Shown here: positions 2,324-25,400 of the stretch, in pieces
Layout of the letters: every line of letters begins with the position of its first letter
Numbering within the stretch: position 1 is the stretch's first letter
Source of the DNA: Macrostomum lignano
Taxonomy: Eukaryota
NCBI GenBank assembly: GCA_002269645.1
Contig: NIVC01000168.1
Span: 723,297-787,296 of the forward strand
Length of the DNA stretch: 64,000 nucleotides
Reading direction: 5' to 3'
Program-made: the position numbers and the translations under genes
Notes under the pieces: generated by a model
Database searches by the model: none
Told to the model about the DNA's origin: nothing
The model's input: only the letters and a program-made list of their open reading frames with translations

Positions 2324-4043
2324 GGCAATGATCATATCATATTAATATTCATTGGAACTGTATAAATGGACATGTTCTCAATTGGCCAAACCGGCCTTAT
2401 CTTGCAGGGGGGTAAAAAACCTTGCGTGTCCCTGTGCTAGCTTAAGAAGTCCCTGTGCCAAGTTCACTCTGCCAAGCTCAAGCCACGTCACTACTAAGTT
2501 CCTCGCCACAGATAGTGCAGCCTCCATTCGATCACGCCACTGCCCCGAGTGGGGATCACGCCACGCCTTCACCGTCGCCACTTCATCACCATTATTGTTG
2601 CCTGCCGCAGTGCCCAAAGTACCATAGTACGGATTCAGCGCCAATCAGGCCCAGTCCCACTCTTATATTGCCGACGGGAATCTATAGCGAGCGAGCCTAA
2701 ATAACCATAATCAATTATCGCCATCGGCCATAGCCTAACAATTGTATCAACTGTGTCTAAGTCTGAGTGCTACCGCTACACAAATTGCCTCCGTTATTAT
2801 TCGTCTTCGTCATTTGATCCTGGGACTGTGTCGCCTTAATCGTCACAGACACGAAATTGTCAAATAATTTGATTTAAAGTCATGTAGTTGCTTGAAAATT
2901 GACAAACTTTCTTTTGAGAAGTTGAAAACAACGTTGCTTTGGTAGGATAAATTGATGGTTAAATTTTATTTTGTTTAATTTCATTAGAATTAAATTCATT
3001 CAAAATTCATTAAAAACGAATAAAATAGGTATTAAGTCTGTATTAAATTAGACTTCTACAAGTTTCTTTAGCACATGGGAAAGTACATGGACCCGAAAAA
3101 GTACTCACATGTACTCGTAAAACGTTAGACTAAGTACAATACAATAAAAGTACAATACAATAAGTAATTTAAGTACAATAAATTACTCGCTTTTTACATG
3201 CATACGAGTACATTTTATGCATATATAAGACGATCACTAAAATAGGATTGAAACCAGCGCTTAAATGATGGCATTCCGGATCACTGCCATCAAATGATGT
3301 TAAAATTTATATGGTCAAGCAAACTTACATGCAATTTCTCATTTTCATCGCATCATTGATCAGTCTATTATTAATGATGTCTCATTCGATGGCGATGTGA
3401 ATCAACCCTAACGATAGAAGATTCGGTGACGTATACTATAAAGTTTTCAATCAGAGATTTAATATTTACGCTCGTAGTAGCTCGTAGAATATTTTTGCAA
3501 GAATAATTTACTTCTTCTAACGGCTTTATGTTCAGCTGAGTGTCAGCTAGTGGATACAAGCCTGGAATTAATTAAGCCAAGTAGTAAAAAATATAATTCA
3601 AGTTGATATTCAAATAATAATTCGTTTGCCTGCAAGTAATAAAGCTACGCTGCAGCTCACACTGGTTTTGTAGCTATTTTCAACATTTCAAAGTTAAATT
3701 TTAAGTTCCCGACATTGGTTAATGAATTTCCACAGCTAATATGACACTATACATGTAGCTGGAACTATTTGGTTTAATAATTTGTCGCTGAGTGGCCCAT
3801 CCAGTGCATGTAACATCTAGCTCGTACTTACAGTATACGAATGGATGGCCAATTGGTCGTGTTCCATCAGAAACTTTTTTGTTAAATTGTAAAATTTAGT
3901 ACGAGTATAGTACTTAGCAACCAAAAATAAAATACAGTGTTTAAGACTCCACGAAAAAAGGATTTTTTATCACAAAAGGTAATGAGAAGGTAATCAAATT
4001 CGAATCTGCGTACAGCTTTTAATGAGTGGACGAAGAAACGTAC

Positions 4044-6010
4044 TTACGAGTTGGGCAGCAATCGGTCAATCTTCTGGAAGATTTCCACCACCTCCTCGTA
4101 CCTGGTCACGTAAGACTCTCTCATTCTCTTGTGCGCGTGCTGCAGCTGCTCCAGGTTGTTGCTGAACCTTGCGAACAGGTAGTACTCAAGGAAGTCGGCG
4201 CTCTGGTCTTCCTTCAGCTCACTGAACCAGTCATTGATGCTCTGCAAGTCCGGCAGCAGCACCGCTCGCAGGCACTTCAGCAGACAGTCGAAGTTCATGT
4301 AGAAGGCCGCCTCGTTCGGAGCCACCCTTGCAGGGAAATACTTGGCCAGGTCGAGAGTGTCGCCCTGCTCCCGCTTGAATTTATTCAGGAATTTCAACTC
4401 CGGCCGCTTGTCGCTGTGGAAGCAGTGTTTCCAGGAATAGTCGTTCGTGTAGATCTCGGCCTTGATATGATTTCGAACTTTCTTCGCATCTTGCTCACCG
4501 GACAGCTCAGAGGTGAGCGGAAGCTGGCGTCTCACTCGATGCTGAGCAGAGTTTCTCAAAATCTCCTTCGCTCCATCCATATCGTTTCTGCTCAGTCTGT
4601 ACAGAACTTTCAAGCCTTCGCGAACTGAGTACGCATTTTCCGGCATCTTGGAGACAATTTCTTCGATTTTGTTTGACTTCGGACCCTGAGCAAGATCGGT
4701 CAGTGAGTTTTCCATGAGTCGTTGAATGTCTGCGTAGCCCTGAAGTGGCAGACTTACTCTGACAGGATAGAAGTAGGGCAGGAGAGTAAACGGGTGGTAG
4801 TAGAATGGATCAACACATTCACCGAGGCTGTTTACTTTGCCGATCCCCGATACCTTTTTCAAATAGTCCCTCACATGTCTGGATAAATCATTGATGACAG
4901 ATTTAAGGCGCTCCACTAATCTTTTCTTGTCTGAATGTTCGCCTTTTAAATAGAGTTCAGCATCCTTCAGAAAGAAATGGGACATGCACGCCAGCTCGAT
5001 TTTTCTGGGCTTCTTCATCTCGGTGAGCAAGAATTGAAGAGATTCTTTTAGCAGCTCAAATAAGTTGGCTCCTGTCCAGCGGTCACGGGGGGTGTTGCTG
5101 ATCATGAAGAATAAGACGGTCTTTGCGTGATACGATTTTAAACCAGGTGCGTTCTCTGACACAACTTCTCTCAGCAGGTACTTGACCAGAATGAACAGCT
5201 GACCCTGAACCGGCAACAGGCGCTTCATAATCTCCTTCTCCACAAAGCTGGTGCTCACTCGCATCTCATTTCTTTGCTTCCCAGTGGCCTCGTTTTTTCG
5301 GTGGTTTCTGATCAGATGCAGGATGAATTTTCGTTGTTTTTTGCTTTCCAGCGCTTTAATTGCATCAACGGTAGCCGTTGGAAAATTGCTTTGACCATCC
5401 AACATTTTCATGACATCAGCTGACGCCACCGCTGCTAGAGAGCAACAGCGGAAGGCCATGACTTCGTCAGTGGCTGGTCTGAGCTCTGATTCAATTGTCG
5501 TCTCTGCTGGCTTTGATTCTAAAAGCACAAATTGTTCATCGCCCAATGTTTAATCTAACTTAAAAAGTGAGGCACAATATACGAGTAGCTATTTAACGTA
5601 TGCGAATTGCTTCTTAAAGTAAACAAACCGTTCACTCAAGCTTTGACTCACCATAACTTGGGAAAATGACGTGTCCTTCTTCATATTCATGCTGTTTAAC
5701 TCCATCACAGCCACATCCAGAAATGTGAATGATTTCAGCCTTCTCCAAATGAGTAAAATCGATGTCGGATTTGGTCAGCAATCCGTTGATGCAGTAGAGG
5801 TTTTGTCCCCAACCGTCGCCGTAGCTTCCCATGATATAAATCTCATCGTTCAGCTCTGCGATGAGCTCGCGATGCTGTTCGGCCAGACACCTCTGGAAGA
5901 TCGCCCTGGGAAAGCCGATTCCCGACTTTAGCAGCGCCTTGTACAGCTGGTCACTGCTCAAATCGACTGGATTGGATTGCTCGATGATTGTGTCACCTGA
6001 AGCTTCCAAA
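4044..6010 (-). CDS. Mab-21/cGLR nucleotidyltransferase domain plus helical C-terminal region (exons 2-3 of the fusion)
   Basis: ORFs 5632..6009 and 4044..5546 carry the N- and C-lobe motifs of the cGAS/Mab-21 family. Confidence 0.88.
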
Positions 6011-9000
6011 CTAAAACAGATCCGGACATTATTTCAATTGTAAATTTACACTACAAGCGTACTAAAAAAGAAAAATTGATAATTGACTCACCTGCTCTCG
6101 ACATCTTCAGGAGATGTGGAGGGTTGCAGAATTTTCGTTAGTTTGCTGCTTACCGACAGCCGTTTGTGCTTCTCCGACAACCTCAATGCTTCCTCGATTT
6201 GTCGGTATTCCCATTGGTTGCACACCTGGGATGCTTTAAGAGCTCCAACTGTGTCGGGACGACCGAATATAACGGCCAGCTGTAGAACGTCATATTGGTT
6301 TGAGTTCTTCGCTTTCAAAGATTGCTGAGCAGCTCTGGACGAAATAAGCAGCTGGTCCAAAACATTGTGCCTCGAAATAGCTGCATGCATGGCGGCATTG
6401 TTACCATTATGATCTTGAATGCTTAAATCTGCTTTTATCCTGAGTAGCTCCTCAACACAGTCAAAATGGCCGTATCGTATTGCCAGCATCAGTGCGGTCA
6501 TTCCATCACTGTTTTTCAAATCGATACAGCCCGTCCCTGATTCAACACAAGTGACGCTTTTCTCACCAATCAGTCTAACAACACTAGCATGACCATTCTG
6601 GGCGGCAATCATGAGTGGCGTCATTCCGTGCTCGTCCTGCTGAGTCAGATCAGCCTTGTTCTCAATTAGAAGAGTCACTGATTTATCGAAGCCCGACTTT
6701 GCAGCGGTGTACAGTGCGGACTGCTTCTCTAAATTGACGTCATTCACATTCGCCCCAGCGTTCAGAAGTTGCTCTGTAAGCTCATAGTTTCCTTTTTCAC
6801 ATGAGTTGATCAATAGTGTGTTGTTGTTCCCGTCTCGTTCATTCGCCTGCTCCTTTGATTGGATCAATGCATTAACAGAATTTTTATCTAGGAGTGAAAA
6901 TATAAATGGCAACATTAAAGAAGATAGCGCTGCTCCAGCTTCGTGCAGCAAACTATAGACCTCTGAAGCGGAGTCAGCTAAACTCAAAGCAGACTGGTTA
7001 TCATTGTTTACTTTGTTAAGATCAGCACCGGCACGAATGAGCTGTTTTACAATTTCTGATCGCTTATTGAAAGAGGCGGCCATAGTGGGAGTGCAGCCAT
7101 TTTTTCCTGGTAAGTCAATGTCTGCTGCAGATTCCAGTAGGCAGTTCGTGACAACTTCAAAACCTTCTTGACAAGCAATGTGCAATGCCGCAGCTCCGTC
7201 AGATCTCTGTGAGTCAATCGCTACTCCAGCACGAACCAGATGTTCAACCATTCGCAAATTGCACCCAAAGCAGCTACAGATAAGAGCCGTGTCTCCTTCC
7301 TTAGTTACAGCGCTTATGTCTGCTCCGCACTGAATGAGGAACATCGCAAGCTTATTGTGCCCATTGGATACTGCTCTGTGCAGTGCAGTGGATTCACCTT
7401 TTCCTGGTCTATCGATATTTTCTCCATTTCTTAGAATAATTTGAACAATTTGATCTTTTCCTGACTGCGCAGCCAAATGCAAAACAGTGTCGGACTCTGC
7501 ATCCTGAATGGTGAAATCTGCACCGTGGTTGATCAGGAGCTCAAATATTTCCAGTCGTCCACTGAACGCTGCGATGTGGAGAGCAGTTGTCAAATTGTTG
7601 TCTTTTCTATCCAAATCGATATTTTTTCTGAGCAACTCTCGCACGATAGAAATGTTTTCAGACACGACTGCGAGGTGCAGGGCGCTGGACCCGTCCTTTG
7701 TAACGGCGCCTAAATGAGCGCCCGCTGCTAACAAAGTCTGAACTGTCAAAAGATTGCCATTGAGACATGCGAGTAGCAGGGGTGTCGTGTCGTTCTTCCC
7801 CAAGATTTCCAATTTCGCACCAGCAGAAATAAGCAATCGGGCTATATCTGTGTGCCCCCACTGAGCAGCCAAGTGCAAGGCAGTGGCTCCATGACCTTCT
7901 CTGTCATTGACGTTGGCACCAGATTCAATTAGTCTTTTGACGATCTTCAAGCAACCAAAGTAGGTTGAAAGGATTAAAGCAGTATTTCCATCACTATCCT
8001 TCTTGTTTACATCAGCTCTTGCATCAATCAGTAGTTCTACTATGATTTCGTGTTTATTCGCAACAGCAAGAATGAGCGGTGTGGCCTGACCTTTGCCTTG
8101 GGCATCGATGTCACTATGTGACCGCAGTAACATTTTCGCGATTTCAAAATGACCATTTTGAGCGGCCATGTGAAGCGCGGTGCTACCATTAGCGTTTCGA
8201 ATTTTCGGATCTGCGCCGAGTTCAAGAAGGCATTTAGCGGCCTTTTCCTTGCCAAAGTAGGCTGCGATGGTGAGTGCGGTGTCGCCATCGCTGTCCTGCT
8301 TGTCGATCGAGGCACTTGCATCGAACAGGAGCTGAATAACTTCAGCGTCATCATTCAGAGCTGCAGAAATCAATGCAGTCTTTCCTTGTGCAGCCTCAGA
8401 ATCAACGGTAGCTTTTTTGCTAAGGAGAAGCCACACAACAAGTTGATGACCATTTTGGGAGGCCAGAATCAGTGGCGTAGCCTGACCTTTTCCTTTGCTG
8501 TCAATATCACCCCCAGCATCCAATAGCATTTGAACGATTTCGTAGTGACCACTTTGAGCTGCCATGTGAATAGCTGTGCTGCCGTACTCATCTCGAATGT
8601 TGACACTCGCACCCGCGTTAAGAAGCATCTCGATGACTCCTGTATTGTTGCTGAACGCAGCGGACATCAATGCTGTTCGTCCATCAAAAGCTCGAAGATC
8701 AGCATTCGCTTGCTTACTGAGCAATATTTTCACTACATCAGCGTGGCTATGCATTGCAGCCAGCATGAGTGCAGAATATCCATCATTATTTACCGCGTCA
8801 ATCAGGGCATCATTATCTAACAGTAGCTGAGCCACGTCTCCACGTCCATTTAGAGAGGCCCGAATCAGAGGTGTTGTTCCATTCTTGCCAATGGCATTTA
8901 CATTGGCCCCATGTTCGAGCAGAAATCTAGTGATCTCAGGATGCCCATTTTGAGCAGCAACATGCAGAGCTGTGCACCCGTTTCGGTCTCCGTGATTGAC

Positions 9001-12000
9001 ATCAGTTTCATCAGTAATGAGTAGCGAAACGATTACAAAGTGTCCGGAGTACGCGGCTCCAATAAGCGGAGTGTCACCTTCGAGGTTCGCCAGACTGGGA
9101 TTCGCCCCATTTGCGATCAAGAGCTCAACAATGCTGTTGTAGCCAAGCAGTGAGGCGTAGAACAAGGCCGTATTACCCATGAGATCCTGTTGATTCACAT
9201 GGGCTCCAGCCAGCAGAAGCTGAACTGACTCATGGTGACCCATGCAGCTGGCAAGGATGATCGGAGTCGCATTCCCTTTCCCGATGCAGTTTATGTCAGC
9301 GCCTTTGCTGATGAGCCATTTTATCACGTCTGTGTGGCCCGTCTGGGCTGCGAGTAAAATCGGCGTCGCCCTCTCGTTGTCTGCGGCGTTAACATCTGCA
9401 GATTTACTGACCAGCAGCTCAGCGATGTCCATTCTATTGAGCAGGGATGCTAGCAGAATGGGAGAATGGCCGTGCTTATTCTTTACATTGGGGTTCGCCC
9501 CCGCAGCCAGAAGTAGCCGAGCAATTTCGAGCGAGGAGACGAATACTGCGTAGAAGAAGGCTGTGTTGCCCTTATTGTCAGGTAAGTCAACTTTGGCGTT
9601 TTTGGAAAGCAGCAGCTCTACGCAATCTTTATGCCTACAATATGTGGCGAGTAGCAACGGTGAATCTCCGTCATCGTCAACAATGTTTACATCAGCTTGA
9701 CGCTCAATCAGAAGTTGCATAACCTCGAAGTGCCCACGAGTTGCTGCCAGCGTTATGGCGGCTGCACCGCCTTTACCTCTGGAGTTGATATCAGCGCCGG
9801 ATTCTAAAAGCAGCTTCACAACTTCAACGTGACCATTTTGTGACGCACAGTGTAGTGAGTTGTGCTTTTCATTGGCGACAGCGTGAATATTGGCCTGGTG
9901 CTTCAGAAGCAAACGGACGGCTTCTACCTGACCATCGAATGCGCTGCAAATCAACGGCGTCTCTCCAGCGTCATTTGGTAAGTTGGGATCAGCTTGGTTC
10001 TCCAGCAAGCACTCAATGACCTCAATATTTCCAACAGCTACAGCCGCCAGGAGCACAGACTGGTTGCCTAAATTTTTACTCTGCTGATTGACATTAGCAC
10101 CCATCGAAACTAGCAGGTATGTAATATCCGGGAAATTCTTGAGTACAGCAAAATGCAAAGCACTCACTCCATTTTCATCTTGATGGTCGATGTTTAAGGT
10201 CTTATCCACTAGCATTTCGACTGCTTCAAAGCAGCCCGAGTAGCAAGATAATGTTAAAGCAGAATCACTTTGAGAGTTCGTCAGATTCACATCTGCACCA
10301 GAATCCAACAGCATTTTCACCAGCTTCGGGTGTCGGTTCAGACATGCCAGCATGAGTGGTGTGGCTCCATTTTTCCCTTTCAAATTCACATCTGCACCAG
10401 CTAGCATAAGCAGGCTCGCAATCTCAAGGCTGCCATCTTGAGCAGCACAGTGCAAAGGCTGAACACCCTCTGATGCTCGAACATGGATGTCTGCTCCGTG
10501 TTTAATTAATATTTTAACAGTTTCAGCACTCTTTGAAAAGGATGCATAGTGCAGGCAAGTTGTGCCATCCGAGCTTTGCGAATTGATGTTTTTTGAAGCA
10601 GCAGCCAGCATTCTAGCGACCTCAGGATTGCCGAGAGCGCATGCCATCATTAAGGCTGTGAGTCCATGAGCAGCGTCGGTCAAATCGGGGTCTGCTTTCG
10701 CGGATAACAAAATCTCGACGGAAGCAGCGCAGCCTCGGAAGGAAGATATGGCAGCAAGCATAAGTGCTGTTACTCCATCGGAATCCTGTAAGTTTGGATT
10801 TGCTCCGGCTTCAACCAGCATTTCGACAACGGGGATTTTTTCACTCGCGCATGCCAGCATCAGGGAAGATCTTCCAAGCGCATCCTGGTGATTAATGTCT
10901 GCTCCAAATTTTATTAAAATTTCACACATTTGAGATACATAATCTTTCATACCTCTTACACAGGCAGCCATCAAGCAGCTGAGCCCATTATGATAAGCAA
11001 AATTAATCTCTGCTCCACTTATTAAAAGAAGCTCCAAGATTTCAGGCCTATTGTTTACACAAGCCGACAAAATTGCCGTGCTCGTATTCTTCCCTCGACT
11101 GTTCACATCGGCCATTGCGCCGACGAGCATTTTCACTATTGGAAGGCAGCCCTGTTGAGTAGCACAATGGATTGCACGGGCTCCTTCCGCATCTTGAATC
11201 TCTAGATCAGCACCCGCATCAATGAGCAGCTCTGCGCATGGCATTCTACAGAAATAAGCCGCAAGTATCAGTGCTGTGTTTCCATTCTTGTCTTGTTGAT
11301 TAACGGCAGCACCAGAGTTTAGTAGCATCAGAACAATGTCATCGAAGCCCCGTTCCGATGCCAAGATTAGAGCTGATTGCAGATCCAAATCTACAGCGTT
11401 CACATCAGCAGAGTACATTAGTAGTAATTGGACAATGTCGGTGAATCCTCCCATTGCAGCAACTGTCAATGGGAACTGACCAAACAATCCAGATTTATCT
11501 GGATCCGCCCCAAACGAAAGAAGCTTCAGAACTGCATCCGTGTTGTTCAGGGCACATGAAGTGAATAAAGCAGATAATCCAAAATCACTTGAGTGGTTAA
11601 CATCCACCCCTGACTCCAAGATCAGACTCAGTGTTTTGACTGACCTGCTGACAGCTGCCAAGGTCAAAGCGGAGTCGCCACTATCGTTTGTAGCGTGAGG
11701 GTCGGCACCCACAGACAGCAGCTCCTTGACTATGTCAGACCTTCCATGAAGGGACGCAATCGTAAGCGCAGTGTTTCCATTCTTTCCTCTGATTTCTAGC
11801 GCTGCTTCAGCAAGCAAAAGCAAGACGAGAACCTCGTAGTGACCATTCTGAGCCGCCATGTGCAGAGCAGTTGATCCATGACTGTCTCTGAGATTCGGAT
11901 TGGCGCCAGCTGACAGAAGCAGCGCAGTTGCCATCAGCTGGCCCGTGTAGGCGGCCAGAATGAGTGCACTGTCTCCATCCTCATCCTGATAGTTTACATC

Positions 12001-14360
12001 AGCACCAGCGAGCAGCAAGTCTGAAGCGATTTCAAAGTGGCCTTGAATGCTGGCCAAGATAAGCGGTGTTCCACCTCCCTTTCCGATCCAATTGACATCA
12101 GCTCCTGCATCAATCAGTAGAGAAACGATTTCTCTGTGGCCATTCTGAGCAGCGAGAAGTAACGGAGTTGCGAGTGTGCCATCGACATAGTCCGGATTTG
12201 CGTCAGCTTCCAATAATAGTTTGACCACAGCCAGGTGACCGGAGTAGGCAGAGTGGGTGAGGGCTGCTCTTCCCATGCAGTCGTATGCATTAACATTGAC
12301 GCCCTTCTTGATGAGCAGGTTCACAACCTCGTCCAAACCTTTGGCAGCTGCAATGATGATTGGTGTGGCGTCACCCTTGCCCACATGCTCGGTGTCTGCT
12401 CCAGCCTCAATCAACTGCTCGGCAATACTCAAATAACCATTCTGAGCAGCGCAAGACAACGCTGAGCCTCCTTCGTTATCCGATGGGCTCACCAACGCCT
12501 GAGCTTTCAGTAGTGCGACCACTATTTTCTCAAAGCCTAAGAAAGAAGCAATAATTAGTGGTGTATTTCCTCCGTCATCTCTTGTCTCAACATCGGCTTG
12601 CGACTTGAGCAGCAACTCAACAACATCCGAATGACCATTCTGGACAGCGAGTCGCAACGGAGTTCCTCCTCTCTTGCCCCTCCAGTCGACATCGGCTCCA
12701 GCATGCAGCAGGTCTCTGCAGAGCTTGACGTGTCCGATTTGAGCAGCCATTATGAGAGGCGTTGCGTTCTGATAGTCCGGCATATCGACATTGGCTCCGG
12801 CTTTGATCAGCACTGCTGCGGTGTCTCTGTATCCGCTCTGAGCTGCGAGTCGCAACGGAGTTCCATCGTTTCTGCCCTTCCAGTCCACTTCCGCACCTGC
12901 AGATAGCAGAGCATCACAAATCTGCGAGTAGCCGCTCTGAGCTGCGAAAATCAGCGGCGTCGCTCTTTGAAAGTCGGCTGCGTCCACCTCGGCTCCAGAG
13001 TGCAAGAGCAGCCGTGTGACCTCCAAGTGACCCTCAGCTGCTGCGAAATGAAGAGCCGTCTTTCCCTCGATATTCGTTTTGTTGATCTCTTCCGGCTCGC
13101 TGCTCACGATAAATTCCACATCTTGCAAGTTTCCACTCCATGCAGCCTCCATCAGCTGAGTTCTCTGCATTCCTGAGAACAAGTTACTGAGCTGGGTTTG
13201 AAGCTCAGAAACCTTCTGCTTTGGCTCTTCAGCCTGAGGTCCGTACGGCCTGGCCTTGAACTTTGGAGCCCTCAGATTGGCGTAAGTCTGCAGACTGACC
13301 AGAATCGCGCTGCTTCTGGTCTCAGCCGCCACATCGAAAATCGAGTTTCCGCTGCTGTCAAAGACGTCGGCTTCTGCCCCGGCCTCGAGCAGCTGCTTCA
13401 CCACGGCCTCTCGACCTGCTTGCACAGCGAGCCATAGCGCTGTTCTCCCGAAGCTGTCCCGGTCTTCCAGCAGCTCCTTGGTATGCGCCAACTGGCTGAC
13501 GATCTCCTCGTGTCCGAGCTGCGCGGCCATCATCAGCGGTGAGCAGCCGCCTTCGTTGGCGATCCTCGGGTCGGCACCGGCCCGCAGCAGCTGAGCGGCG
13601 ATCTCGCGGTGTCCCTCTTGACAGGCGAGCAGCAGCGGGCTTGTTGAGTCGTTCTGCAGCAGATTCACGTCTGCACTGGCTTCAATCAGGTGAGCAACAA
13701 CATTTCCGTGCCCGTTCTGAGCGGCTGCACTCAGAGGCGACGTCCCAAACTCGTCCTGGACGTTGATGCGAGCACCTCGATCCACCAGTAACTTGACGAT
13801 TGCCTCGTGTCCATTTTGAGCAGCCATTATCAGCGGTGAAACAGGCTTTTCAGGAATATCAAGATTTGATCGTTTGCTCATCATCAGAATGAGCAGTTCC
13901 TCTCGGCCGAGCTCGCATGCTGTGATGACCTGCCAGGTCAGGTCTGCATTGCTTGGTGCGCACTGCAGCACCATCTGCATCAGCTCAGGCTCATCGTCTC
14001 TCAAAAAATTCTCCATCAGCTCGTCGAAGGTTTGTAAATCCAAGAAAGGCGAATCTGTCTTTTGAAGAATCAACCGCGCGACATTCACGTGACCTCCTCG
14101 GAGAGCCGCTAGTAAAGCCGTCTCTCCCTGATCGTTCCTAACGTCCAGTCGAGCTGAGAAGTCAAGGAGAGTGTGCACAATGTTCACGTGATCGGCTCTC
14201 GCAGCGATCAGTAGTGGCGTGTCTCCCGCTGCGTCGGTATCGTCCGGAGCGAAGCCAGCCTGAAGCAGCTCCAAAACTCTCTCGGACTGTCCGACGCTGC
14301 TCGCGACGTGCAGCTCTGTTCGACCTTGGCTGTTGCGACGATTTGGCGTTTTCTTTACCT
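4044..14360 (-). CDS. Giant ankyrin-repeat / cGAS-like receptor (Mab-21 nucleotidyltransferase) fusion; exons 14360-6092, 6010-5652, 5518-4044; start codon in an unlocated upstream exon
   Basis: Donor AG|GTGAGT at 6091 joins acceptor ttttag| at 6011 in phase 2 (AGT then TTG). Donor G|GTGAGT at 5651 joins acceptor gcttttag| at 5519 in phase 1 (GAA). Both joins keep frame. The frame is open upstream of 14274 to acceptor tttcag| at 14361 and adds one more ANK repeat (GRTELHVASSVG). NTase motifs are GSYGDG, SDID and TDEVMAFRC. Mab-21 motifs are EMRVSTSFVEKEI, LFILVKYL, LKSYHAKTVLFF and CMSHFFLKDAELY. Confidence 0.88.
6092..14360 (-). CDS. Ankyrin array exon (8,269 nt; roughly 75-80 ANK repeats)
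   Basis: Recurrent 33-aa G-x-TPL/TAL-x-x-A-x-x-x-G-H-x-x-x-V-x-x-LL-x-x-GA pattern throughout ORF 6088..14274. The repeat count is estimated from length. Confidence 0.97.
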
Positions 14361-14907
14361 CTGAAATTTAGTTTTGGGCTGATAGAAATTGGCTGGCAAT
14401 AATGACACTTGACAGAAATATCGATAAATAACAAATTACTATAACAGTTGTATGCAATTTAGTACGAATAAAATCAGGGCTCCAGTGCCAGGCGTGTTAA
14501 CTGTTGATCTACATGCATTCCGCCGCCTTAGATAGACTAAAATATCTTAAAATTCTTTCCTAACAGCATATCTTGCTTATTTGAATTTGCGAAAATACAT
14601 CATTACTAGGCACAGCTTTTTTACTCGTGACAGATAAAAATAGTTCTACACTCATAAGAAAAACTTTTTGTATTGATCAGGTAAGAAAAATAACAAAAAC
14701 AATTGCAGACTGCCCAGTCTGATGAGAGATCGAAAGTGCATTCAACACACAGAATGCCTTTGTACTTGTGCTCGAGTGCGTCTGAGCGCATGCTTATAAA
14801 TGCATTTTTTTACTAAATTGTTAGTAGAAAGAAATTTGGGAATTGGGGGCTCTCGATTCAAAATGACTAAATTCTTACATTATTTTGGGAATCGCTATTG
14901 TTAGCAC

Positions 14908-15043
14908 TCATTTTGGCTCCACATGCTTTCATTTTGGCTCCACATACACTCATTTTGGCTTCACATGCACTAATTTTGGCTCCACATGCACTCATTTTGG
15001 CTCCACATGCACTCATTTTGGCTTCACATGCACTCATTTTGGC
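14908..15043. repeat. 21-bp minisatellite (cattttggctccacatgcact), about 6-7 copies
   Basis: Direct tandem repeats. Confidence 0.9.
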
Positions 15044-15249
15044 ACCGCAGCCCGGCACTTACTTTTTAGCGCCACAGGTGGGCAATCATTTTGGCGCTAT
15101 ATTTTGACTCCCTGAAGCACAATTATTGATTTCTATAATGAGTCACATGATGGAGCGTGGGGGGACAAAGCATTGGCATGCCCCCCATAGCTTTTACTGG
15201 GGGAACACGTCCCCCCAGTCTTCCCGGTGGCGACGCTTCTGCTTAATGG

Positions 15250-15380
15250 CACGCACCCTAAACGACACGCACCCTAAACGACACGCACCCTTAACGACAC
15301 GCACCCTTAACGAAACGCACCCTTAACGACACGCACCCCTAACGACACGCACCCTTAACGACACGCACCCTTAACGACAA
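15250..15380. repeat. 16-bp tandem repeat (ttaacgacacgcaccc), about 8 copies
   Basis: Direct tandem repeats. Confidence 0.9.
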
Positions 15381-15615
15381 CACCTAATATTTCTTCATGC
15401 AAGCAAAATTAAAATTACCTAAGTTAACTACTTTCAGTAGAAACAGTAGCATTTTAATTCTAAAAATAAATAGCCACGATAATGCTTTTTTTAGTAGCTG
15501 GCACATGATGAAGTGCACCAATATTATTCAATGTACATAAAATCGCTTAAGACAGAAGGAAAGGTCTTATGAAGCTCTTTAGAACAGCTGCACTGCTCCT
15601 GAGCTCAGGCAAAAT

Positions 15616-15803
15616 GGGACGCTTTCATAAGACCTAAACTTCATCATATTGTCTAAAATTCACAACGTCTAAAACTGAATGTGAAAGTGTGCAGAGATTT
15701 TAGACGCAGTGAAATTCAAAATTTCATTAGGCATAAAATTTAGGCGATGTGAAGTCATGTGCTTCAAAGGCGTTGTGAAATTTAGGTCTTTATGAAGCGC
15801 CCC
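15616..15803. mobile_element. MITE-like element with terminal inverted repeats
   Basis: gggacgctttcataagacctaaa is inverted relative to tttaggtctttatgaagcgccc. No clear TSD. Confidence 0.55.
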
Positions 15804-16519
15804 AGCAAAGTTTATCTCATTCCCTGGACAATAAACCGTCTATCTATACGGTCGTACAGCTGTTGAACGCAAACAATTGGCAAACTAAACTTGATCGTCT
15901 CATACTCATTGTGATTGTGTATGGCCACTTTTCTCTCCGAAACGCCCAGACTGTGGTTGAATTAGTAAACACCTGTCTGTTATTTTCGGACTGTTTATGT
16001 CAGTAGAAAAAGTTAAATAATAGCAATAATAAACTTTAGTTGCACTCATTTCTCAGTGCGTGCGTACGGCCTTAGATAACAATTAGCGGCCTCTTCGTCT
16101 CTTTATAATCATCTCACATTCGAGCTTCGTAAAAACTGTCTGGCTGCTTCTGCGAGTCTGGCAGTCCAAGCCTCGAGCAGTAGCTACCGGCTAACTGTAC
16201 ATTAAAGCCGCAAAGTTCCACATTTATAATTACAATATGCGGCACATTGGCACTGTTTACTGCTGTGTAATGTTTAGGAACAAAAAATTAATGCATTTTT
16301 CTGGTTTGGAAATTATTGGCAGTCGTTTCTGCAGCCCTGAACTGCCGCAATGTTTGACCAGTGCCATCGCAGCTTATAGTTCAGCACAATGACCTTCATT
16401 TTTACCTTCTTCATTAAATTTATGTGATGGTAGTAGAGCACAATCGAAACAAAAAAATTGAAAAGGAAATTATTGTTGCTGAAAACATCAGCGCCCCGGT
16501 AATTGAAACTATGAGGACT

Positions 16520-17470
16520 CAAATACCTCCAGATCCTCCATTGGATTGCAGCTTTGCTCCCAGATCCTCCATTGGATTGCAGCTATGCTCACAGATCCTC
16601 CATTGGATTGCAGCTATGCTCCCAGATCCTCCATTGGATTGCAGCTTTGCTCCCAGATCCTCCATTGGATTGCAGCTATGCTCCCAGATCCTCCATTGGA
16701 TTGCAGCTTTGCTCCCAGATCCTCCATTGGATTGCAGCTTTGCTCCCAGATCCTACATTGGATTACAGCTATGCTCACAGATCCTACAGTGGATTACAGC
16801 TATGCTTCCAGATTTTATAGTGGATTGCAGCTATGCTCACAGATCCTACATTGGATTACAGCTATGCTCACAGATTTTGCTTTGGATTACAGCTTTTCTC
16901 ACAGATCCTACAGTGGATTACAGCTATGCTCACAGATCCTACAGTGGATTACAGCTTTTCTCACAGATCATACAGTGGATTACAGCTTTTCTCACAGATC
17001 CTACAGTGGATTACAGCTATGCTCACAGATCCTACAGTGGATTACAGCTTTTCTCACAGATCATACAGTGGATTACAGCTTTTCTCACAGATCCTACAGT
17101 GGATTACAGCTTTTCTCACAGATCATACAGTGGATTACAGCTTTTCTCACAGATCCTACAGTGGATTACAGCTTTTCTCACAGATCATACAGTGGATTAC
17201 AGCTATGCTCACAGATCCTACAGTGGATTACAGCTTTTCTCACAGATCATACAGTGGATTACAGCTTTTCTCACAGATCCTACAGTGGATTACAGCTTTT
17301 CTCACAGATCATACAGTGGATTACAGCTATGCTCACAGATCCTACAGTGGATTACAGCTTTTCTCACAGATCCTACAGTGGATTACAGCTTTTCTCACAG
17401 ATCCTACAGTGGATTACAGTTATCCCTTCTATATACTACAGTGGATTGTAGCTATGCTCCTAGAACTTAC
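16520..17470. repeat. 31-bp minisatellite (cagatcctccattggattgcagctatgctcc drifting to cagatcctacagtggattacagcttttctca), about 30 copies
   Basis: Tandem units; the translations repeat every 31 aa (3 x 31 nt). Confidence 0.95.
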
Positions 17471-18164
17471 ATTGGACTGCATTTCATCTCCAATTCAATT
17501 CATATTCCATATTGCATAGCCTTAAAACCAGCTGGAAATCAAACTCGCTGGGCACGAGAACTCACCAGACTCTTCAGCTCCGTCATCATCGACCCCAGCC
17601 TCCATGATGCTCAGGACGCAGAGCCTCAAAGGAACTGCGAGAAAAGATGGATATTTATGAATTTAAACATTTCCCGATTGGCTTCAGTGAGCATAAATCA
17701 TTGGATTAACAAACCTTTCCTTTCTTGAAAGTTTCCTGGAAAATCTTGAAATCAATGCTTTTAGAGACTGGTTTTTCTAGCCAGAAATTCTTTTTGCCAG
17801 GAAAATAAATGGTACCTTGTAGTCATTAATGACTGCAGTAATGCTTCTATGCATATACACGTACAAGCGTTTCCCCAAACTAGGTACTAACATTCCAGCG
17901 TACCCCTCTGTACGTTCATTGAATTAATGCACATTATGAATTCAGTGTACATTGCAGTTTGTTATTTTGCAGTCTGAAACTAAGTGAAAATGGTTAGAAA
18001 AAGCCTATTTATGTACATGTATGTCATGCATAGGATTAACGAAGCAAGGCAGTATTTTGATTCACAAAAGTTAAAGAGCAGGTGGACTCTATATGAGTAC
18101 CTGTACTCAAAGTATGTCAGGTCTGCACTATTTAGTGTGTCAGTTCTGTACTGTTTCGTGTGTC

Positions 18165-19545
18165 AGGTTAGACTGTATCAGGTCAGACTGTGTCAGGTCA
18201 GGCTGTGTCAGGTCAGGCTGTGTCAGGTCAGGCTGTGTCAGATCAGGCTGTGTCAGGTCAGGCTATGTCAGGTCAGGCTGTGTGAGGTCAGGCTGTGTGA
18301 GGTCAGGCTGTGTGAGGTCAGGCTGTGACAGGTCAGGCTGTGTCGGGTCAGGCTGTGTCAGGTCAGGCTATGTCAGGTCAGGCTGTGTCAGGTCAGACTG
18401 TGTCAGGTCAGGCTGTGTCAGGTCAGGCTGTGTCAGGTCAGGCTGTGTCAGGTCAGGCTGTGTCAGGTCAGGCTATGTCAGGTCAGGCTGTGTGAGGTCA
18501 GGCTGTGTGAGGTCAGGCTGTGTGAGGTCAGGCTGTGACAGGTCAGGCTGTGTCGGGTCAGGCTGTGTCAGGTCAGGCTATGTCAGGTCAGGCTGTGTCA
18601 GGTCAGGCTGTGTCAGGTCAGGCTGTGTCAGGTCAGGCTGTGTCAGGTCAGGCTGTGTCAGGTCAGGCTGTGTCAGGTCAGGCTGTGTCAGGTCAGGCTG
18701 TGTCAGGTCAGGCTATGTCAGGTCAGGCTGTGTGAGGTCAGGCTGTGTGAGGTCAGGCTGTGTGAGGTCAGGCTGTGACAGGTCAGGCTGTGTCGGGTCA
18801 GGCTGTGTCAGGTCAGGCTATGTCAGGTCAGGCTGTGTCAGGTCAGGCTGTGTCAGGTCAGGCTGTGTCAGGTCAGGCTGTGTCAGGTCAGGCTGTGTCA
18901 GGTCAGGCTGTGTCAGGTCAGGCTGTGTCAGGTCAGGCTGTGTCAGGTCAGGCTATGTCAGGTCAGGCTGTGTGAGGTCAGGCTGTGTGAGGTCAGGCTG
19001 TGTGAGGTCAGGCTGTGACAGGTCAGGCTGTGTCGGGTCAGGCTGTGTCAGGTCAGGCTATGTCAGGTCAGGCTGTGTCAGGTCAGGCTGTGTCAGGTCA
19101 GGCTGTGTCAGGTCAGGCTGTGTCAGGTCAGGCTGTGTCAGGTCAGGCTGTGTCAGGTCAGGCTGTGTCAGGTCAGGCTGTGTCAGGTCAGGCTGTGTCA
19201 GGTCAGGCTGTGTCAGGTCAGGCTGTGTCAGGTCAGGCTGTGTCAGGTCAGGCTGTGTCAGGTCAGGCTGTGTCAGGTCAGGCTGTGTCAGGTCAGGCTG
19301 TGTCAGGTCAGGCTGTGTCAGGTCAGGCTGTGTCAGGTCAGGCTGTGTCAGGTCAGGCTGTGTCAGGTCAGGCTGTGTCAGGTCAGGCTGTGTCAGGTCA
19401 GGCTGTGTCAGGTCAGGCTATGTCAGGTCAGGCTGTGTCAGGTCAGATTGTGTCAGGTCAGGCTGTGTCAGGTCAGGCTGTGTCAGGTCAGGCTGTGTCA
19501 AGTCAGGCTGTGTCAGATCAGGCTGTGTCAGTTCAGGCTAATCAG
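18165..19545. repeat. 15-bp satellite (tcaggtcaggctgtg) with 210/240-bp higher-order repeat
   Basis: The variant block gtgag x3, gtgaca, gtcgg, ctatg recurs at about 18271, 18481, 18721 and 18961. Confidence 0.97.
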
Positions 19546-22443: not shown

Positions 22444-25400
22444 ATGGTGCAGCCATTGTGCACCTTCGCTGGCCCCATTTGCTGGCTTCTGTCGGCATTC
22501 TTGGCTCTGTGCGTCAGCGCCCAGAATATTGGTATGCCTGTGATTGCATTTTATCTCTAAAAAATAACTGCTAAAAATGAAAGACCTACGGTGTCAATGG
22601 GATCCTTGAGATCAAACTTAGTGTCAGATTTATCCATATAAACTGACAACTAATCGTATCCTTCCCTATCTCTTCAATCATTCTATGTAACTTTTTGCGT
22701 GTGGTGGCCCCCAATTGGGCCGTTTTATTTTGTTCTAGTGTGTGCACAATCTATTTAGAGCGGTTCGTATATTAGTTGCACGATCGATATCTCAGGCCTC
22801 TACGAGGGCGAGGCGCACGAAGAGGCCCAGTTCTTTTAATTTCAAATATACGACGAGCTAGCCTGGATCTCGCCTCGGTTTATACTCTCCCTTCCGACTT
22901 TTACGACCGTTTAAGTAATTTGTATTACAGATTTAAACGCAGTTAACAGATAAGACCGTCTGTTGCTAAATTTAGCATTAAGTGTTAGCTCATTCTTAGT
23001 TAATTCTTCCCACTGGCAATTGAACACTTGGTGCTTTTAACTTTCTTCGCTAAATATTCTAAGCCTCTTAACGAAGTAAGAGCGCAATCACATTTGCTTT
23101 TCGCATCTATCCTAATTTTTGTCTGAGGTAGGATTCTTGACTTGTGCCGATCTGACATTTCTGGTACAGCCAAGGGTACATTGAGTGTGTAGCACTATGT
23201 TGTTATTAAAACTGCATGAAATGACGAAAGATGCTTAGCGGTAGTATTTAATAGATAAAGAATCCTTCAATCTTTGTTCAATCTCAGGGTGCAAAATTGT
23301 GTTAATGAAGGCAATCTCAAGAAGTCACGACCTCGTTGATTCTTTAGGTCCGGCTCAGCTCGACAAACTCAGCCAGTCGCCAGCCGGTCTCGGCCGCTAC
23401 ATGCCGGCAGCCTGGGCCATCCCCAAGTCCACAGTAGCGAACCAGGGCCAGAACTCCCTGATGCTGACTGCCACAGCCTCTGGGCCCTTCATCCAGGGTG
23501 CTTACCTGACAGAGATGCCCGTGTGGATCTACTTTCCATTCGACTTCAACGTCACCGGCTTTCTGGTCTATGGCAACATGTCTCGTTCGACTAGTCCGGC
23601 AGGACGGGTGACCAGCTTCAAGGCGGGCTACTCAACCACGAAGTCCTACCTGACCTCAGGCTCCACCGTGTACATCATGGGAGGATCCGGCTCGCCTGTG
23701 AGTAACATTTTCTAGTCGGTCGCTCGCGTCCGGCCCCGGGTCGACGGGCGCCACCATGATCGACGCCGTCTGGGGCAGCCTCGCCGACCTCGCGGCCCGG
23801 GGAACCTCGGTCCACCTGCAGTGGGTGCCTGGCCACGCGGGAATCCCAGGCAACGAGGCCGTGGACGAGATCGCCAAGCAAGGCACCACGCTGGCGCAAG
23901 GCACCGCGCCCGTACCGCTAGCTGCCGCGCAGGCTGCCGTCCGCCGCTACTGCCTCGCCCGCTGGCACCAGATCTACAACGCGGCGGCCACCGAGGCGGC
24001 GAGCACGAGCTCGCTTGCCTGGCACCTTGCCTGCACGGCGGGCCGCCTGCCGCCTCAGCCGACAAGCGACCTCACGCGGCGGCAGGAGCGGCTGATCTGC
24101 CAGCTGCGCGCCGACCGCTGCCCGGCCCTGCGGGGCTTCCAGGCCGCCATCGGCGTTGACGTGGCCCCCACCTGCCGCCTCTGTGGCGATGGAGAGGAGA
24201 CGGCGGCCCATCTGCTGATCTCCTGCCCCGCCCTGACATCACACCGCTGCCGCCTCTGGGGGCCAAGCCCGGAGCCCGCGGCAGTTTTCGAGAACTGCGT
24301 CGCGGTGTTGAACTTCCTCGGGAAGGCGGGCGCCATCTGACGCCCGGTGCCATGGGCCCTGGCCCGAGCACGCCCGAAGAAGAAGAAGAAGAAGCTAGGA
24401 ACTTACTTATGATTTATAATTTCTAACCCTCAGCCTTCCACTAATCATCACCTTCCTAAGACAAACATATTAGTGATTAGATTTTGAATAAATGAGTGAC
24501 ACATGTAGCTCTGTATAAATATATTCAGTAGTCGCAAGCAAGATTGAATAATAGATGATAAATCATCGCATTTTAATAACCCCCCCCACGCAACCCCTTC
24601 AAAATGTCCAAATCAACGGATTATGCGCCGTTCCCAGACTCGCAATTCTCGCCGATTCCCCGATTCTGGCCGATGAACCCCCGCATAACATAAGAGATAT
24701 ACAAAACGCTTTAAAGAGGAAGCAGACATTTCGAGTGGCCTGCCCTCACCATTTACAATGCCGTCATCAAGCACTTGTGGCTTTTTGTTTTGTAAGAGTA
24801 GTACAGTTGTCCAAAACTGCTACACACTGAACTTTTGAGAGGATCGATGAGAGGATCGACTGTAGGGGCGGAGCAGCTCCACGATCCCTGGTTGGGTTCC
24901 GTTCGCAGCTACAATAATTTAATTGGGGCTTGTGCACGAAAATTAGCCGGGGGTCGTCGTGCGATGCAAAACTATGAGAGCCGACCCCCAAGGCACAGAG
25001 TCGACATGCCAGATATACTAGACATACTAGACATACTAGACATACTAGACATACTAGACATACTAGACATACTAGACATACTAGACATACTAGACATACT
25101 AGACATACTAGACATACTAGGTAGCAGACACCATGTGCTAACATAAGCTAGCAAATATAGCTAAGCCAGTTGGCATATAATAGAGAACATCACTTGAGAA
25201 GTTTTTCTGCCATTTCAAGTCAGTTATTATGCTACAAAGGTTTTACATTTGCATGCTTTCTTTCAGAAAACCTTTTCTGTCTTCTACGCCGATGCCAGCA
25301 CTCCAAGTTTTGTGCCCTTGGAAGTGTCCATGGTAACCCAGCTGGCGCTCTTCGAAGTTGCGACATGCCAGACGGCCTGCGTCCTGCAGCTGGATTTGGT

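What the first reader, a model, noticed from the sequence alone, without database searches (positions are those of the whole stretch)
4044..14360. About 75-80 ankyrin repeats spliced in frame to a cGAS-like nucleotidyltransferase: a candidate giant sensor-enzyme immune receptor
Seen in sequence: three separate ORFs join through canonical GTGAGT/AG sites with exact phase match into at least about 3,360 aa, and the apparent ORF stop at 6088 is part of the donor site. Established: cGLRs are innate-immune receptors that make cyclic dinucleotides or related oligonucleotides, and ankyrin arrays serve as ligand-binding scaffolds. Inference: the very long ANK solenoid may replace nucleic-acid sensing with protein or ligand sensing, or provide autoinhibition. 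Accessory domains on invertebrate cGLRs are known, but I do not know of an array this long.
Basis: partly seen in the sequence, partly recalled or inferred. Interest (0 to 1): 0.9.

Follow-up and report, generated by a model that had tools for sequence, protein, structure and literature searches.

The report
Giant ankyrin-repeat cGAS-like receptor gene
This flatworm (Macrostomum lignano) gene joins about 76 ankyrin repeats to a cGAS-like signalling enzyme with an intact active site; it is an unannotated, unusually large member of an ankyrin–cGLR family that a 2023 survey of animal immune sensors had already catalogued.

Summary
On the minus strand, an 8.27-kb open exon (14360..6092) encodes about 76 ankyrin repeats. 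It joins in frame, through GTGAGT/AG introns of 81 and 133 nt, to two exons encoding a 611-aa C-terminal module.

That module is a Mab-21/cGLR nucleotidyltransferase:
- Pfam Mab-21_C scores above its cut-off.
- A family profile matches Sp-cGLR1 and cGAS in the PDB.
- hhalign against bona fide Mab-21 proteins gives 99.9% probability.
- The AlphaFold model (pLDDT 88.8) matches only MAB21L1, cGAS, Sp-cGLR1 and MB21D2.
- The GS, DxD and D catalytic residues are present.

The window comes from Macrostomum lignano, which holds a large paralogous family (77 cluster representatives with E<1e-10). These paralogs share the ANK–linker–NTase–helical-extension plan and a conserved intron position and phase, but carry only 0–24 repeats.

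Li et al. 2023 already listed ANK–cGLR fusions and cloned five M. lignano proteins, two of which visibly belong to this family. None is named among the 15 active enzymes they analysed in depth. The architecture is therefore known. What is new is this unannotated gene and the length of its array.

I add a candidate first exon (17605..17566) and a terminal mini-exon (3561..3543), giving 3,385 aa. The immune-sensor function is inferred and has not been shown.

The parts
17566..17605 (-). Candidate exon 1 (inferred). ATG in an A(-3)/G(+4) context, 13 codons (MEAGVDDDGAEES) plus 1 nt, then a GTGAGT donor in phase 1 that completes GAG with the AG at 14360-14359.
   Evidence: This is the only non-satellite ATG-to-GT[AG]AG candidate with the right phase in the 6 kb upstream, and it keeps the full CDS in frame. 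There is no transcript evidence. The alternative is SL trans-splicing at the TTTCAG acceptor.
14361..17565 (-). Putative intron 1 (3,205 nt), or an outron if the gene is trans-spliced. It contains 21-nt, 16-nt and 31-nt satellite arrays.
6092..14360 (-). Giant ankyrin exon (8,269 nt). It holds about 76 ANK repeats in four blocks: 3, 5, about 62 continuous, and 5. A roughly 75-aa non-ANK tail leads into the linker.
   Evidence: The acceptor TTTCAG| lies at 14361/14360.
6011..6091 (-). Intron (81 nt), GTGAGT...TTTTAG. The apparent TGA stop of the ANK ORF (6090-6088) lies inside the donor, so retaining this intron would give an ANK-only protein.
5652..6010 (-). Exon encoding the linker, the N-terminal spine helices and the first half of the NTase core. 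It carries the GS motif (MGSYGDGW), the DxD motif (SDIDF) and a conserved H-x3-CxC...GH cluster.
5519..5651 (-). Intron (133 nt), GTGAGT...TTTTAG, phase 1. Its position and phase are conserved in the M. lignano paralogue locus L001.
4048..5518 (-). Exon encoding the third catalytic Asp strand (RPATDEVMAF), the Mab-21_C lobe (LKSYHAKT, SHFFLKD) and a family-specific helical extension of about 265 aa.
4044..4046 (-). TAA stop, used if the last intron is not removed. It overlaps the GTAAGT donor at 4047-4042.
3543..3561 (-). Probable terminal mini-exon, adding ...S-LVSTS and a TGA stop after a 486-nt intron (acceptor TTCCAG|).
   Evidence: It reproduces exactly the C-terminus of P0007 (UniRef A0A1I8J5X5, M. 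lignano), which is 100% identical to the last 109 residues encoded upstream. P0007 is itself a predicted model, not a cDNA.

Best explanation
This is one protein-coding gene of the flatworm Macrostomum lignano, about 3,385 aa and roughly 363 kDa. It is a divergent, unannotated paralogue of the species' expanded ANK–cGLR family.

Architecture (shown): a very long ankyrin solenoid of about 76 repeats (acidic, pI 5.1); a roughly 90-aa linker; a Mab-21/cGAS-fold nucleotidyltransferase with an intact GS...DxD...D catalytic centre and the SYH-KT nucleotide-stacking motif (pI 8.7); and a family-specific helical C-terminal extension packed into the same predicted body.

Mechanism (inferred): it works as a cGAS-like pattern-recognition receptor. 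The enzyme module is held inactive until a ligand is recognised, then makes a nucleotide second messenger (a cyclic di- or oligonucleotide) from NTPs. The ANK array is the variable recognition or regulatory module. It would bind a protein or other non-nucleic-acid ligand, or act as a scaffold or autoinhibitor, as the repeat arrays of NLRs and TLRs do.

Why I infer an immune role: the family has expanded in this lineage, its repeat number is highly variable (0–24 in paralogues, about 76 here), the charge of its NTase module has diversified (pI 5.3–10.0), and some paralogues are fused to caspase domains.
For: Gene structure:
- The splice is in frame with consensus sites.
- Exon 3 has no Met before the NTase core.
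- Intron position and phase are conserved with paralogue L001.
- Dozens of M. lignano proteins have ANK repeats, then the same linker, then the same module.

Family assignment:
- Pfam Mab-21_C scores 31.7 bits against a cut-off of 24.1.
- The family profile against PDB sequences gives Sp-cGLR1 E=1.4e-7, cGAS 2.8e-7 and MAB21L1 2.8e-4.
- hhalign against 20 proteins, 8 of which I scanned and found to carry Pfam Mab-21 + Mab-21_C, gives probability 99.9 and E=5e-33, with GS, SDxD and D-x-V-x-A aligned.
- The AF2 model has pLDDT 88.8 and pTM 0.90. Its only significant Foldseek matches are MAB21L1, cGAS, Sp-cGLR1 and MB21D2.

Active site: G62, S63, D83, D85, D138, Y250 and K253 are present here and conserved in 29–35 of 35 family members.

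Immune context:
- Li et al. 2023 classify these M. lignano proteins as cGLRs and list ANK–cGLR as a recurrent architecture (PMC9980059).
- PAA45980.1, cloned in their screen, sits in the cluster of P0015, which hits my query at E=2e-56.
- Paralogues P0070 and P0040 carry a Peptidase_C14 domain.
Against: - No transcript evidence for any junction was available. The first exon is only a candidate.
- Pfam's Mab-21 NTase model (PF03281) does not hit the protein directly. Structural similarity to solved cGLRs is moderate (TM about 0.5 on the target, rmsd 7–9 Å), and the best structural match is MAB21L1, which has no immune role.
- Li et al. cloned five M. lignano proteins, two visibly of this family. 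None is named in the main text, and flatworms are not among the taxa listed for their 15 active enzymes, so catalysis is unproven for the whole family.
- The same paper notes that most platyhelminths lack cGLRs. I could not check whether M. lignano has STING or another receptor for such a signal.
- Nothing in the sequence says what the ANK array binds. The NTase module's basic pI (8.68, above the 8.5 that Li et al. associate with nucleic-acid sensors) leaves nucleic-acid sensing by the enzyme module open.
Confidence: 0.6

Rival explanations
1. The NTase module itself still senses nucleic acid, as cGAS and cGLR1 do. The ANK array is not the sensor. Instead it serves as a scaffold, localisation device, oligomerisation platform or autoinhibitor that sets where and when the enzyme can fire.
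For: The NTase+Mab-21_C module has pI 8.68, above the >8.5 that Li et al. report for dsDNA/dsRNA-sensing cGLRs. About half of the paralogues' modules are equally basic. A conserved H-x3-CxC...H/C cluster in the N-lobe could be a metal-stabilised surface element, loosely reminiscent of the cGAS zinc thumb.
Against: The five M. lignano NTase constructs were tested with dsDNA and poly I:C, and none is named among the active enzymes analysed in depth. The Cys/His cluster sits at a different place in the fold from the cGAS Zn thumb. The large variation in ANK number among paralogues is more typical of a recognition module.
Confidence: 0.2
2. It is a Mab-21-fold protein with a role outside immune signalling, comparable to MAB21L1/2 or MiD49/51. 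It would act structurally or regulatorily, for example as a giant cytoskeletal or membrane scaffold, with no second-messenger synthesis.
For: The best Foldseek matches are MAB21L1 chains. No activity is reported for relatives. Ankyrin arrays are classical scaffolds.
Against: MAB21L1-type proteins lack a functional active site (Li et al.). Here GS, DxD and D are intact and conserved across a family that is otherwise only about 33% identical, which argues for selection on catalysis. By sequence profile the closest solved relative is Sp-cGLR1, an active cGLR.
Confidence: 0.13
3. The ANK ORF and the Mab-21 ORFs are two separate adjacent genes, possibly an operon resolved by SL trans-splicing, and the in-frame junction is coincidental.
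For: No cDNA was available. M. lignano has operons and trans-splices about 30% of its genes (PMC8629364). Retaining the 81-nt intron would terminate the ANK protein immediately.
Against: - Exon 3 has no ATG before the conserved N-terminal helices; the first Met is inside the GS motif strand.
- The SL's ATG would be out of frame at this acceptor.
- The acceptor is TTTTAG, not the [T/C]TNCAG trans-splice motif.
- Paralogue gene models all span ANK to NTase.
- The splice sites are consensus and the phases match exactly.
Confidence: 0.04
4. It is a dead or untranscribed duplicate, that is, a pseudogene of the ANK–cGLR family.
For: The current public protein sets do not annotate it, apart from a 114-aa fragment. 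It sits among satellites and transposon relics.
Against: 10,158 nt of coding sequence has no internal stop or frameshift, all splice sites are intact, and all catalytic and fold-defining residues are kept, even though the protein is only about 33% identical to its nearest paralogues. That pattern is not expected without purifying selection.
Confidence: 0.03

Closest known systems
Macrostomum lignano ANK–cGLR proteins catalogued by Li et al. 2023 (e.g. PAA45980.1, PAA86972.1; PMC9980059)
   Same: Same species. Same order of parts: ANK repeats, linker (…LSxxLxxAGF…), GS/DxD/D NTase, Mab-21_C, helical extension. Homology reaches E about 1e-56 to 1e-69 over nearly the whole 611-aa module. Intron position and phase are conserved in one paralogue.
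   Different: Only about 30–36% identical. It has about 76 repeats against 0–24 in the 34 paralogues counted. It is not present as a protein record apart from a 114-aa fragment.
Stylophora pistillata cGLRs, including Sp-cGLR1 (PDB 8gjy) and the coral ANK- or death-domain-fused cGLRs
   Same: Sp-cGLR1 is the best solved-structure relative by sequence profile (E=1.4e-7) and a Foldseek match. Li et al. describe coral cGLRs fused to ANK repeats.
   Different: Sp-cGLR1 is a stand-alone dsRNA sensor that makes 3'3'-cUA. Here the N-lobe is strongly diverged (no direct PF03281 hit), a Cys/His-rich insertion lies between the DxD strand and the third-Asp strand, and a 265-aa C-terminal extension is added.
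Vertebrate cGAS
   Same: Bilobed Mab-21 fold, GS + [DE]x[DE] + D catalytic centre, and the SYH-KT motif of the C-lobe.
   Different: It has no cGAS-type zinc thumb at the equivalent position and no disordered basic N-terminus. An enormous ANK array stands in its place. The activating ligand and the product are unknown.
MAB21L1 (PDB 5eog/5eom) and MB21D2 (7lt1)
   Same: These are the top Foldseek matches (E about 1e-5, TM about 0.52 on the target).
   Different: According to Li et al., MAB21L1-type proteins lack a predicted functional active site. This protein keeps one.
Repeat-array innate immune receptors and long ANK solenoids (ANK/TPR/WD40/LRR-bearing NLR/STAND proteins; NOMPC with 29 ANK repeats; ankyrins with 24). 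From general knowledge, not tested here.
   Same: A long, variable solenoid attached to a signalling enzyme, in a lineage-specific expanded family.
   Different: The output domain is a nucleotidyltransferase, not a NACHT/NB-ARC switch or an ion channel. The continuous run of about 61 repeats is roughly twice the length of those characterised arrays.

Membership tests
cGLR / Mab-21 superfamily | Mab-21 C-terminal lobe (Pfam PF20266) above the curated cut-off | tested here: met
   31.7 bits against a gathering score of 24.1, residues 230–325 of the 611-aa module.
cGLR / Mab-21 superfamily | Direct match to the Pfam Mab-21 NTase-core model (PF03281) | tested here: not met
   No PF03281 hit even at E<=1. 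The N-lobe is too diverged for the single-sequence HMM test.
cGLR / Mab-21 superfamily | Homology of the whole NTase core plus C-lobe to bona fide Mab-21 proteins by profile methods | tested here: met
   hhalign of family profile A3 against A4 gives probability 99.9, E=5.3e-33 over 296 columns. A4 holds 20 proteins; the 8 of them that I scanned carry PF03281 + PF20266. Profile against PDB sequences: Sp-cGLR1 1.4e-7, cGAS 2.8e-7.
cGLR / Mab-21 superfamily | Bilobed cGAS/Mab-21 three-dimensional fold | tested here: met
   AF2 model with pLDDT 88.8 and pTM 0.90. The only Foldseek PDB hits with E<1e-3 are MAB21L1, cGAS, Sp-cGLR1 and MB21D2 (probability 1.0, TM 0.43–0.53 on the target). This is a predicted structure, not an experimental one.
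cGLR (catalytically competent subset) | Active-site G-S motif and the [D/E]h[D/E] ... [D/E] metal-binding triad | tested here: met
   G62-S63, D83-I-D85 and D138 are present. They are conserved in 34, 33, 32, 30 and 29 of 35 family members and align with GS / SDxD / D-x-V-x-A of Mab-21 proteins. They lie on beta1/helix, beta2 and a later strand of the model.
cGLR (functional definition) | Ligand-dependent synthesis of a nucleotide second messenger | not testable with these tools
   This needs biochemistry. The M. lignano constructs cloned by Li et al. are not named among the 15 active enzymes they analysed in depth.
cGLR (functional definition) | A cognate receptor (STING or other) in the same genome | not tested
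   No eukaryotic genome search remained available. None is encoded in this 64-kb window: the window holds only one copy of the family module, and the other long ORFs that I scanned gave no relevant Pfam hit.
M. lignano ANK–cGLR expansion | N-terminal ANK array + conserved linker + NTase + family-specific C-terminal helical extension, in that order | tested here: met
   Alignments A1 and A2 and the representative search: 53 hits with E<1e-30. All 19 that I looked up among the top 77 are M. lignano.
M. lignano ANK–cGLR expansion | Shared gene structure | tested here: met
   A phase-1 intron lies in the fourth codon after the conserved EEGHVxxP, both in the window (TAT G|GTGAGT) and in paralogue L001 (GCT G|GTACGT). 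Only one paralogue was compared.
Ankyrin-repeat proteins | Tandem 33-residue ANK repeats | tested here: met
   Pfam Ank_2 1451 bits and Ank 1316 bits. 76 HMM hits, with 65 of 75 spacings equal to 33 aa.

The most novel reading that the evidence does not exclude
The roughly 61-repeat continuous ankyrin superhelix, about twice the length of the longest characterised ANK arrays, may be a direct, non-nucleic-acid sensing surface. It might also act as a mechanical or oligomerising element whose ligand-induced change switches on a cGLR enzyme. That would make this the first cGLR shown to be controlled by an appended repeat solenoid rather than by nucleic acid binding to the enzyme core. In a flatworm lineage otherwise thought to have largely lost cGLR signalling, it would imply a receptor repertoire built on the NLR/TLR logic of variable repeats plus a conserved output domain.
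Probability: 0.3. Interest if true: 0.75.

Novelty: new member of a known kind. Interest (0 to 1): 0.5.

Why it matters
Ligands are known for only a small minority of animal cGLRs, and all known ligands are nucleic acids. Li et al. name the inactivity of many cGLRs in vitro, which they ascribe to unknown ligands, as a key limitation of their screen.

A family in which the same enzyme module is attached to ANK arrays of 0 to about 76 repeats is a natural experiment on whether appended repeat domains supply ligand specificity. The extreme member is the obvious place to look for a bound partner.

M. lignano is a tractable laboratory animal; from my general knowledge it supports RNAi and transgenesis. 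The question is therefore testable.

In practical terms, the gene is missing from current protein sets and should be annotated.

Tried and rejected
- First AF2 run with a 2-sequence alignment: pLDDT 33, unusable. Replaced by the 35-sequence run.
- The search for homologous proteins with alignment A1 returned nothing, not even P0001. I treat this as a tool limitation, not a biological result.
- The word-indexed search with the C-terminal module found only one paralogue. The exhaustive representative search was needed to see the family.
- The scan of prokaryotic genome contigs with the family motifs found no relative. That collection holds no eukaryotes, so it says nothing about flatworms.
- The search with the N-terminal 464 aa found only generic ANK proteins at or below 37% identity. 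No existing model gives the true N-terminus.
- The look-up of encoding contigs for P0007: not on record.
- SL trans-splicing as the source of the start codon. The acceptor TTTCAG fits the published [T/C]TNCAG motif, but the SL's terminal ATG would read ATG-AGG-TAA. It falls in frame only if the AG two bases downstream is used. This is left open, and a cis exon at 17605..17566 is offered instead.
- Higher-order periodicity or recent block duplication in the ANK array: none. Identity at lags of 33 to 132 residues is flat at about 0.27 and TRF finds nothing.
- Neighbouring ORFs scanned for STING, TIR, caspase or other partners: nothing. There is only an RNase H/zf-RVT relic and unassignable ORFs.
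- A second copy of the module in the window: none.


Full report
**What is in the sequence.** The minus strand carries three long ORFs, at 6088..14274, 5632..6009 and 4044..5546. The first ORF's apparent stop, TGA at 6090-6088, lies inside a consensus donor (AG|GTGAGT, last exon base 6092). An acceptor TTTTAG| opens the next ORF at 6010. A second GTGAGT donor follows base 5652, and a second TTTTAG| acceptor precedes 5518. The introns are 81 and 133 nt long. Joined, the frame is open for 3,369 codons, from the stop just upstream of the acceptor TTTCAG| at 14361/14360 to TAA at 4046-4044.

**The ankyrin array.** Pfam Ank_2 scores 1451 bits and Ank 1316 bits. An HMM iterated on the protein itself finds 76 repeats, and 65 of the 75 spacings are exactly 33 residues. 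The repeats fall into blocks of 3, 5, about 62 and 5, and about 61 of them form one continuous run. They are old and diverged:
- Mean pairwise identity of the 28-residue cores is 34% (maximum 68%).
- Tandem Repeats Finder sees nothing at the DNA level.
- There is no higher-order period.

The array is therefore neither an assembly artefact nor a recent amplification. The region is acidic, with pI 5.1.

**The C-terminal 611 residues: sequence evidence.**
- Pfam finds Mab-21_C (PF20266) above its curated cut-off (31.7 against 24.1 bits). It does not find the Mab-21 NTase model PF03281.
- A single-sequence search of the PDB gives only marginal cGAS hits, at E about 0.009.
- An exhaustive HMMER search of 1.84 billion cluster representatives finds 143 relatives, 77 of them with E<1e-10.
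- All 19 of the top 77 representatives that I looked up are Macrostomum lignano proteins. Most have ANK repeats followed by the same linker and module.
- The weaker hits are ordinary Mab-21 proteins. All ten that I scanned have Mab-21_C, eight also have PF03281 above its cut-off, and some add TPR repeats.
- A profile of 11 family modules matches Sp-cGLR1 (8gjy, E=1.4e-7), cGAS (2.8e-7) and MAB21L1 (2.8e-4) in the PDB.
- hhalign of that profile against 20 of the weaker hits, 8 of them confirmed as Mab-21 proteins, gives probability 99.9 and E=5.3e-33 over 296 columns. The family's GS, SDID and RPAxDxVxA motifs are superposed on their GS, SDxD and DxVxAxRC motifs.

**The C-terminal 611 residues: structure evidence.** With a 35-sequence alignment AlphaFold2 gives pLDDT 88.8 and pTM 0.90; with only two sequences it failed. 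The only Foldseek matches in the PDB with E<1e-3 are MAB21L1, mouse cGAS, Sp-cGLR1 and MB21D2. TM is about 0.5 on the target, so the fold is recognisably Mab-21 but diverged.

**Active site.** The numbering below is for the 611-aa module.
- G62-S63 follows the first strand, D83-x-D85 opens the long second strand, and D138 lies on a later strand.
- These residues are conserved in 34, 33, 32, 30 and 29 of 35 family members.
- The C-lobe SYH-KT motif is kept: Y250 in 34 of 35 members and K253 in 35 of 35. It aligns to cGAS SYHVKT.
- The window's protein has every one of these residues. It is therefore predicted to be catalytically competent, unlike MAB21L1-type proteins.
- A conserved H96-x3-C100-x-C102 ... 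H114 / C146 cluster sits between the DxD strand and the third-Asp strand. This is a possible metal site, at a different position from the cGAS zinc thumb. That reading is an inference.
- Residues of about 346–611 form a helical extension conserved across the family and folded into the same predicted body. It has no Pfam match.

**One gene or two.** Five observations favour one gene.
- Exon 3 (6010..5652) has no Met before the conserved N-terminal helices. Its first Met lies inside the GS-motif strand.
- The M. lignano gene models all run from ANK repeats through the linker into the module.
- In paralogue locus L001, ANK repeats lie immediately upstream. The intron after EEGHVxxP is at the same codon and phase as here: GCT G|GTACGT there, TAT G|GTGAGT here.
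- The acceptor at 6010 is TTTTAG, not the published trans-splice motif [T/C]TNCAG, and the SL's ATG would be out of frame there.
- No transcript data were available, so the junctions remain predicted.

**Source organism and annotation status.** P0007 (UniRef A0A1I8J5X5, M. lignano, 114 aa) is 100% identical to the last 109 encoded residues, so the window comes from M. lignano. Neither the module nor the N-terminal 464 residues has any other near-identical protein in the databases searched. The gene is in effect unannotated.

**Extensions to the gene model.**
- 3' end. P0007 ends ...LLPNSLVSTS. That sequence is reproduced if the GTAAGT overlapping the TAA stop (donor after base 4048) is spliced to TTCCAG| at 3562. 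This adds a 19-nt exon, 3561..3543.
- 5' end. Exon 2 starts in phase at the acceptor TTTCAG|. The only non-satellite upstream ATG exon with a matching phase is 17605..17566. It has A at −3 and G at +4, encodes MEAGVDDDGAEES, and ends in a GTGAGT donor.
- With both additions the CDS is 10,158 nt, encoding 3,385 aa with a single terminal stop.
- An alternative for the 5' end is SL trans-splicing. The 35-nt M. lignano SL ends in ATG (PMC8629364), but that ATG is in frame only if the AG two bases downstream of the main acceptor is used. Both readings of the 5' end are inferences.

**Comparison with what is known.** Li et al. 2023 (PMC9980059) catalogued about 3,000 animal cGLRs.
- They report that 87% are stand-alone enzymes and that some carry TPR or ANK modules. 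They describe coral cGLRs fused to ANK repeats and death domains.
- Their domain table lists several M. lignano PAA accessions with Ank_2 hits.
- Their 140-enzyme screen included five M. lignano proteins. Two of the construct sequences visible to me (PAA86972.1 and PAA45980.1) are plainly this module. PAA45980.1 belongs to the cluster of P0015, which matches my query at E=2.3e-56.
- No M. lignano enzyme is named in the main text, and flatworms are not among the taxa listed for the 15 active enzymes. The authors state that many cGLRs appear inactive, probably because their ligands are unknown.
- They also note that most platyhelminths encode no cGLRs beyond Mab21-like proteins.
- Their table contains other cGLR entries with ANK hits at positions beyond residue 2000, so very large ANK-bearing cGLR models exist elsewhere.

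The architecture is thus already known and this is a new member of it. What sets it apart is the array length: about 76 repeats against 0–24 in 34 paralogues.

**Likely mechanism.**
- Shown: a repeat solenoid covalently linked to a catalytically intact Mab-21-fold NTase, in a large and diversified lineage-specific family.
- Inferred: a ligand-gated cGLR that makes a nucleotide second messenger, with the ANK array as the recognition or regulatory module.
- Supporting circumstantial evidence: the variable repeat number, the wide spread in charge of the NTase module (pI 5.3–10.0), and two paralogue representatives carrying a caspase (Peptidase_C14) domain after the module.
- Open: this module's pI is 8.68, above the 8.5 that Li et al. 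associate with nucleic-acid sensors, so nucleic-acid sensing by the core is not excluded. The product, the ligand and the downstream receptor are all unknown.

**Verdict.** Function is inferred. This is a new member of a known kind and of moderate interest. Its value lies in offering an extreme, tractable case for testing whether appended repeat arrays give cGLRs their ligand specificity.

Noticed in passing
window 16530-17419, 15242-15379, 14904-15043 (inside the putative first intron): Three satellite arrays: 31 nt x 28.7 copies, 16 nt x 8.6 copies and 21 nt x 6.7 copies, at 90–93% matches.
   Followed up: partly
window 18159-19539: A 15-nt minisatellite (TGTGTCAGGTCAGGC) with 92 copies at 95% matches and strong GC skew. 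It creates a spurious 482-aa ORF of SGCVR repeats on the plus strand.
   Followed up: partly
window 57861-60032 (+): A 724-aa open frame rich in Cys and His (CxxC pairs near the N-terminus) with no Pfam or PHROGs match. It may be a domesticated or relic transposase-like gene.
   Followed up: partly
window 23756-24340 (+): An ORF with an RNase H tail (PF00075, 31 bits) and a sub-threshold zf-RVT match. This is a retrotransposon relic.
   Followed up: no
window 6088-6090 and 4044-4046 (minus strand): Both apparent stop codons, TGA and TAA, are embedded in consensus donors (GTGAGT and GTAAGT). Intron retention would therefore end translation at once: an ANK-only isoform at the first site, and a C-terminus 5 aa shorter at the second.
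   Followed up: partly
M. lignano paralogues P0070 (PAA93319.1, 2111 aa) and P0040 (1099 aa): The same Mab-21-like module is followed by more ANK repeats and a caspase domain (Peptidase_C14, 96 and 90 bits). In P0070 the DxD motif reads DIN, so that copy may be catalytically dead. P0036 also carries WSC and RING domains, but it is an older, possibly merged model.
   Followed up: partly
C-terminal module residues 96-146 (window about 5725-5440, minus strand): A conserved H-x3-C-x-C ... G-H ... C-C cluster lies between the DxD strand and the third catalytic Asp strand. C102 is invariant in 35 of 35 members. It is a candidate metal-binding insertion with no counterpart at that position in cGAS.
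   Followed up: partly
P0007 / UniRef A0A1I8J5X5: The only database protein identical to this gene is a 114-aa fragment named 'Ras-GEF domain-containing protein'. The sequence gives no support for that name, and the locus is otherwise unannotated.
   Followed up: partly
L001 (M. lignano NIVC01000876.1) 8934-9974: A 346-aa ANK-repeat ORF lies directly upstream of the annotated start of paralogue P0001. That model is probably truncated at its 5' end.
   Followed up: no
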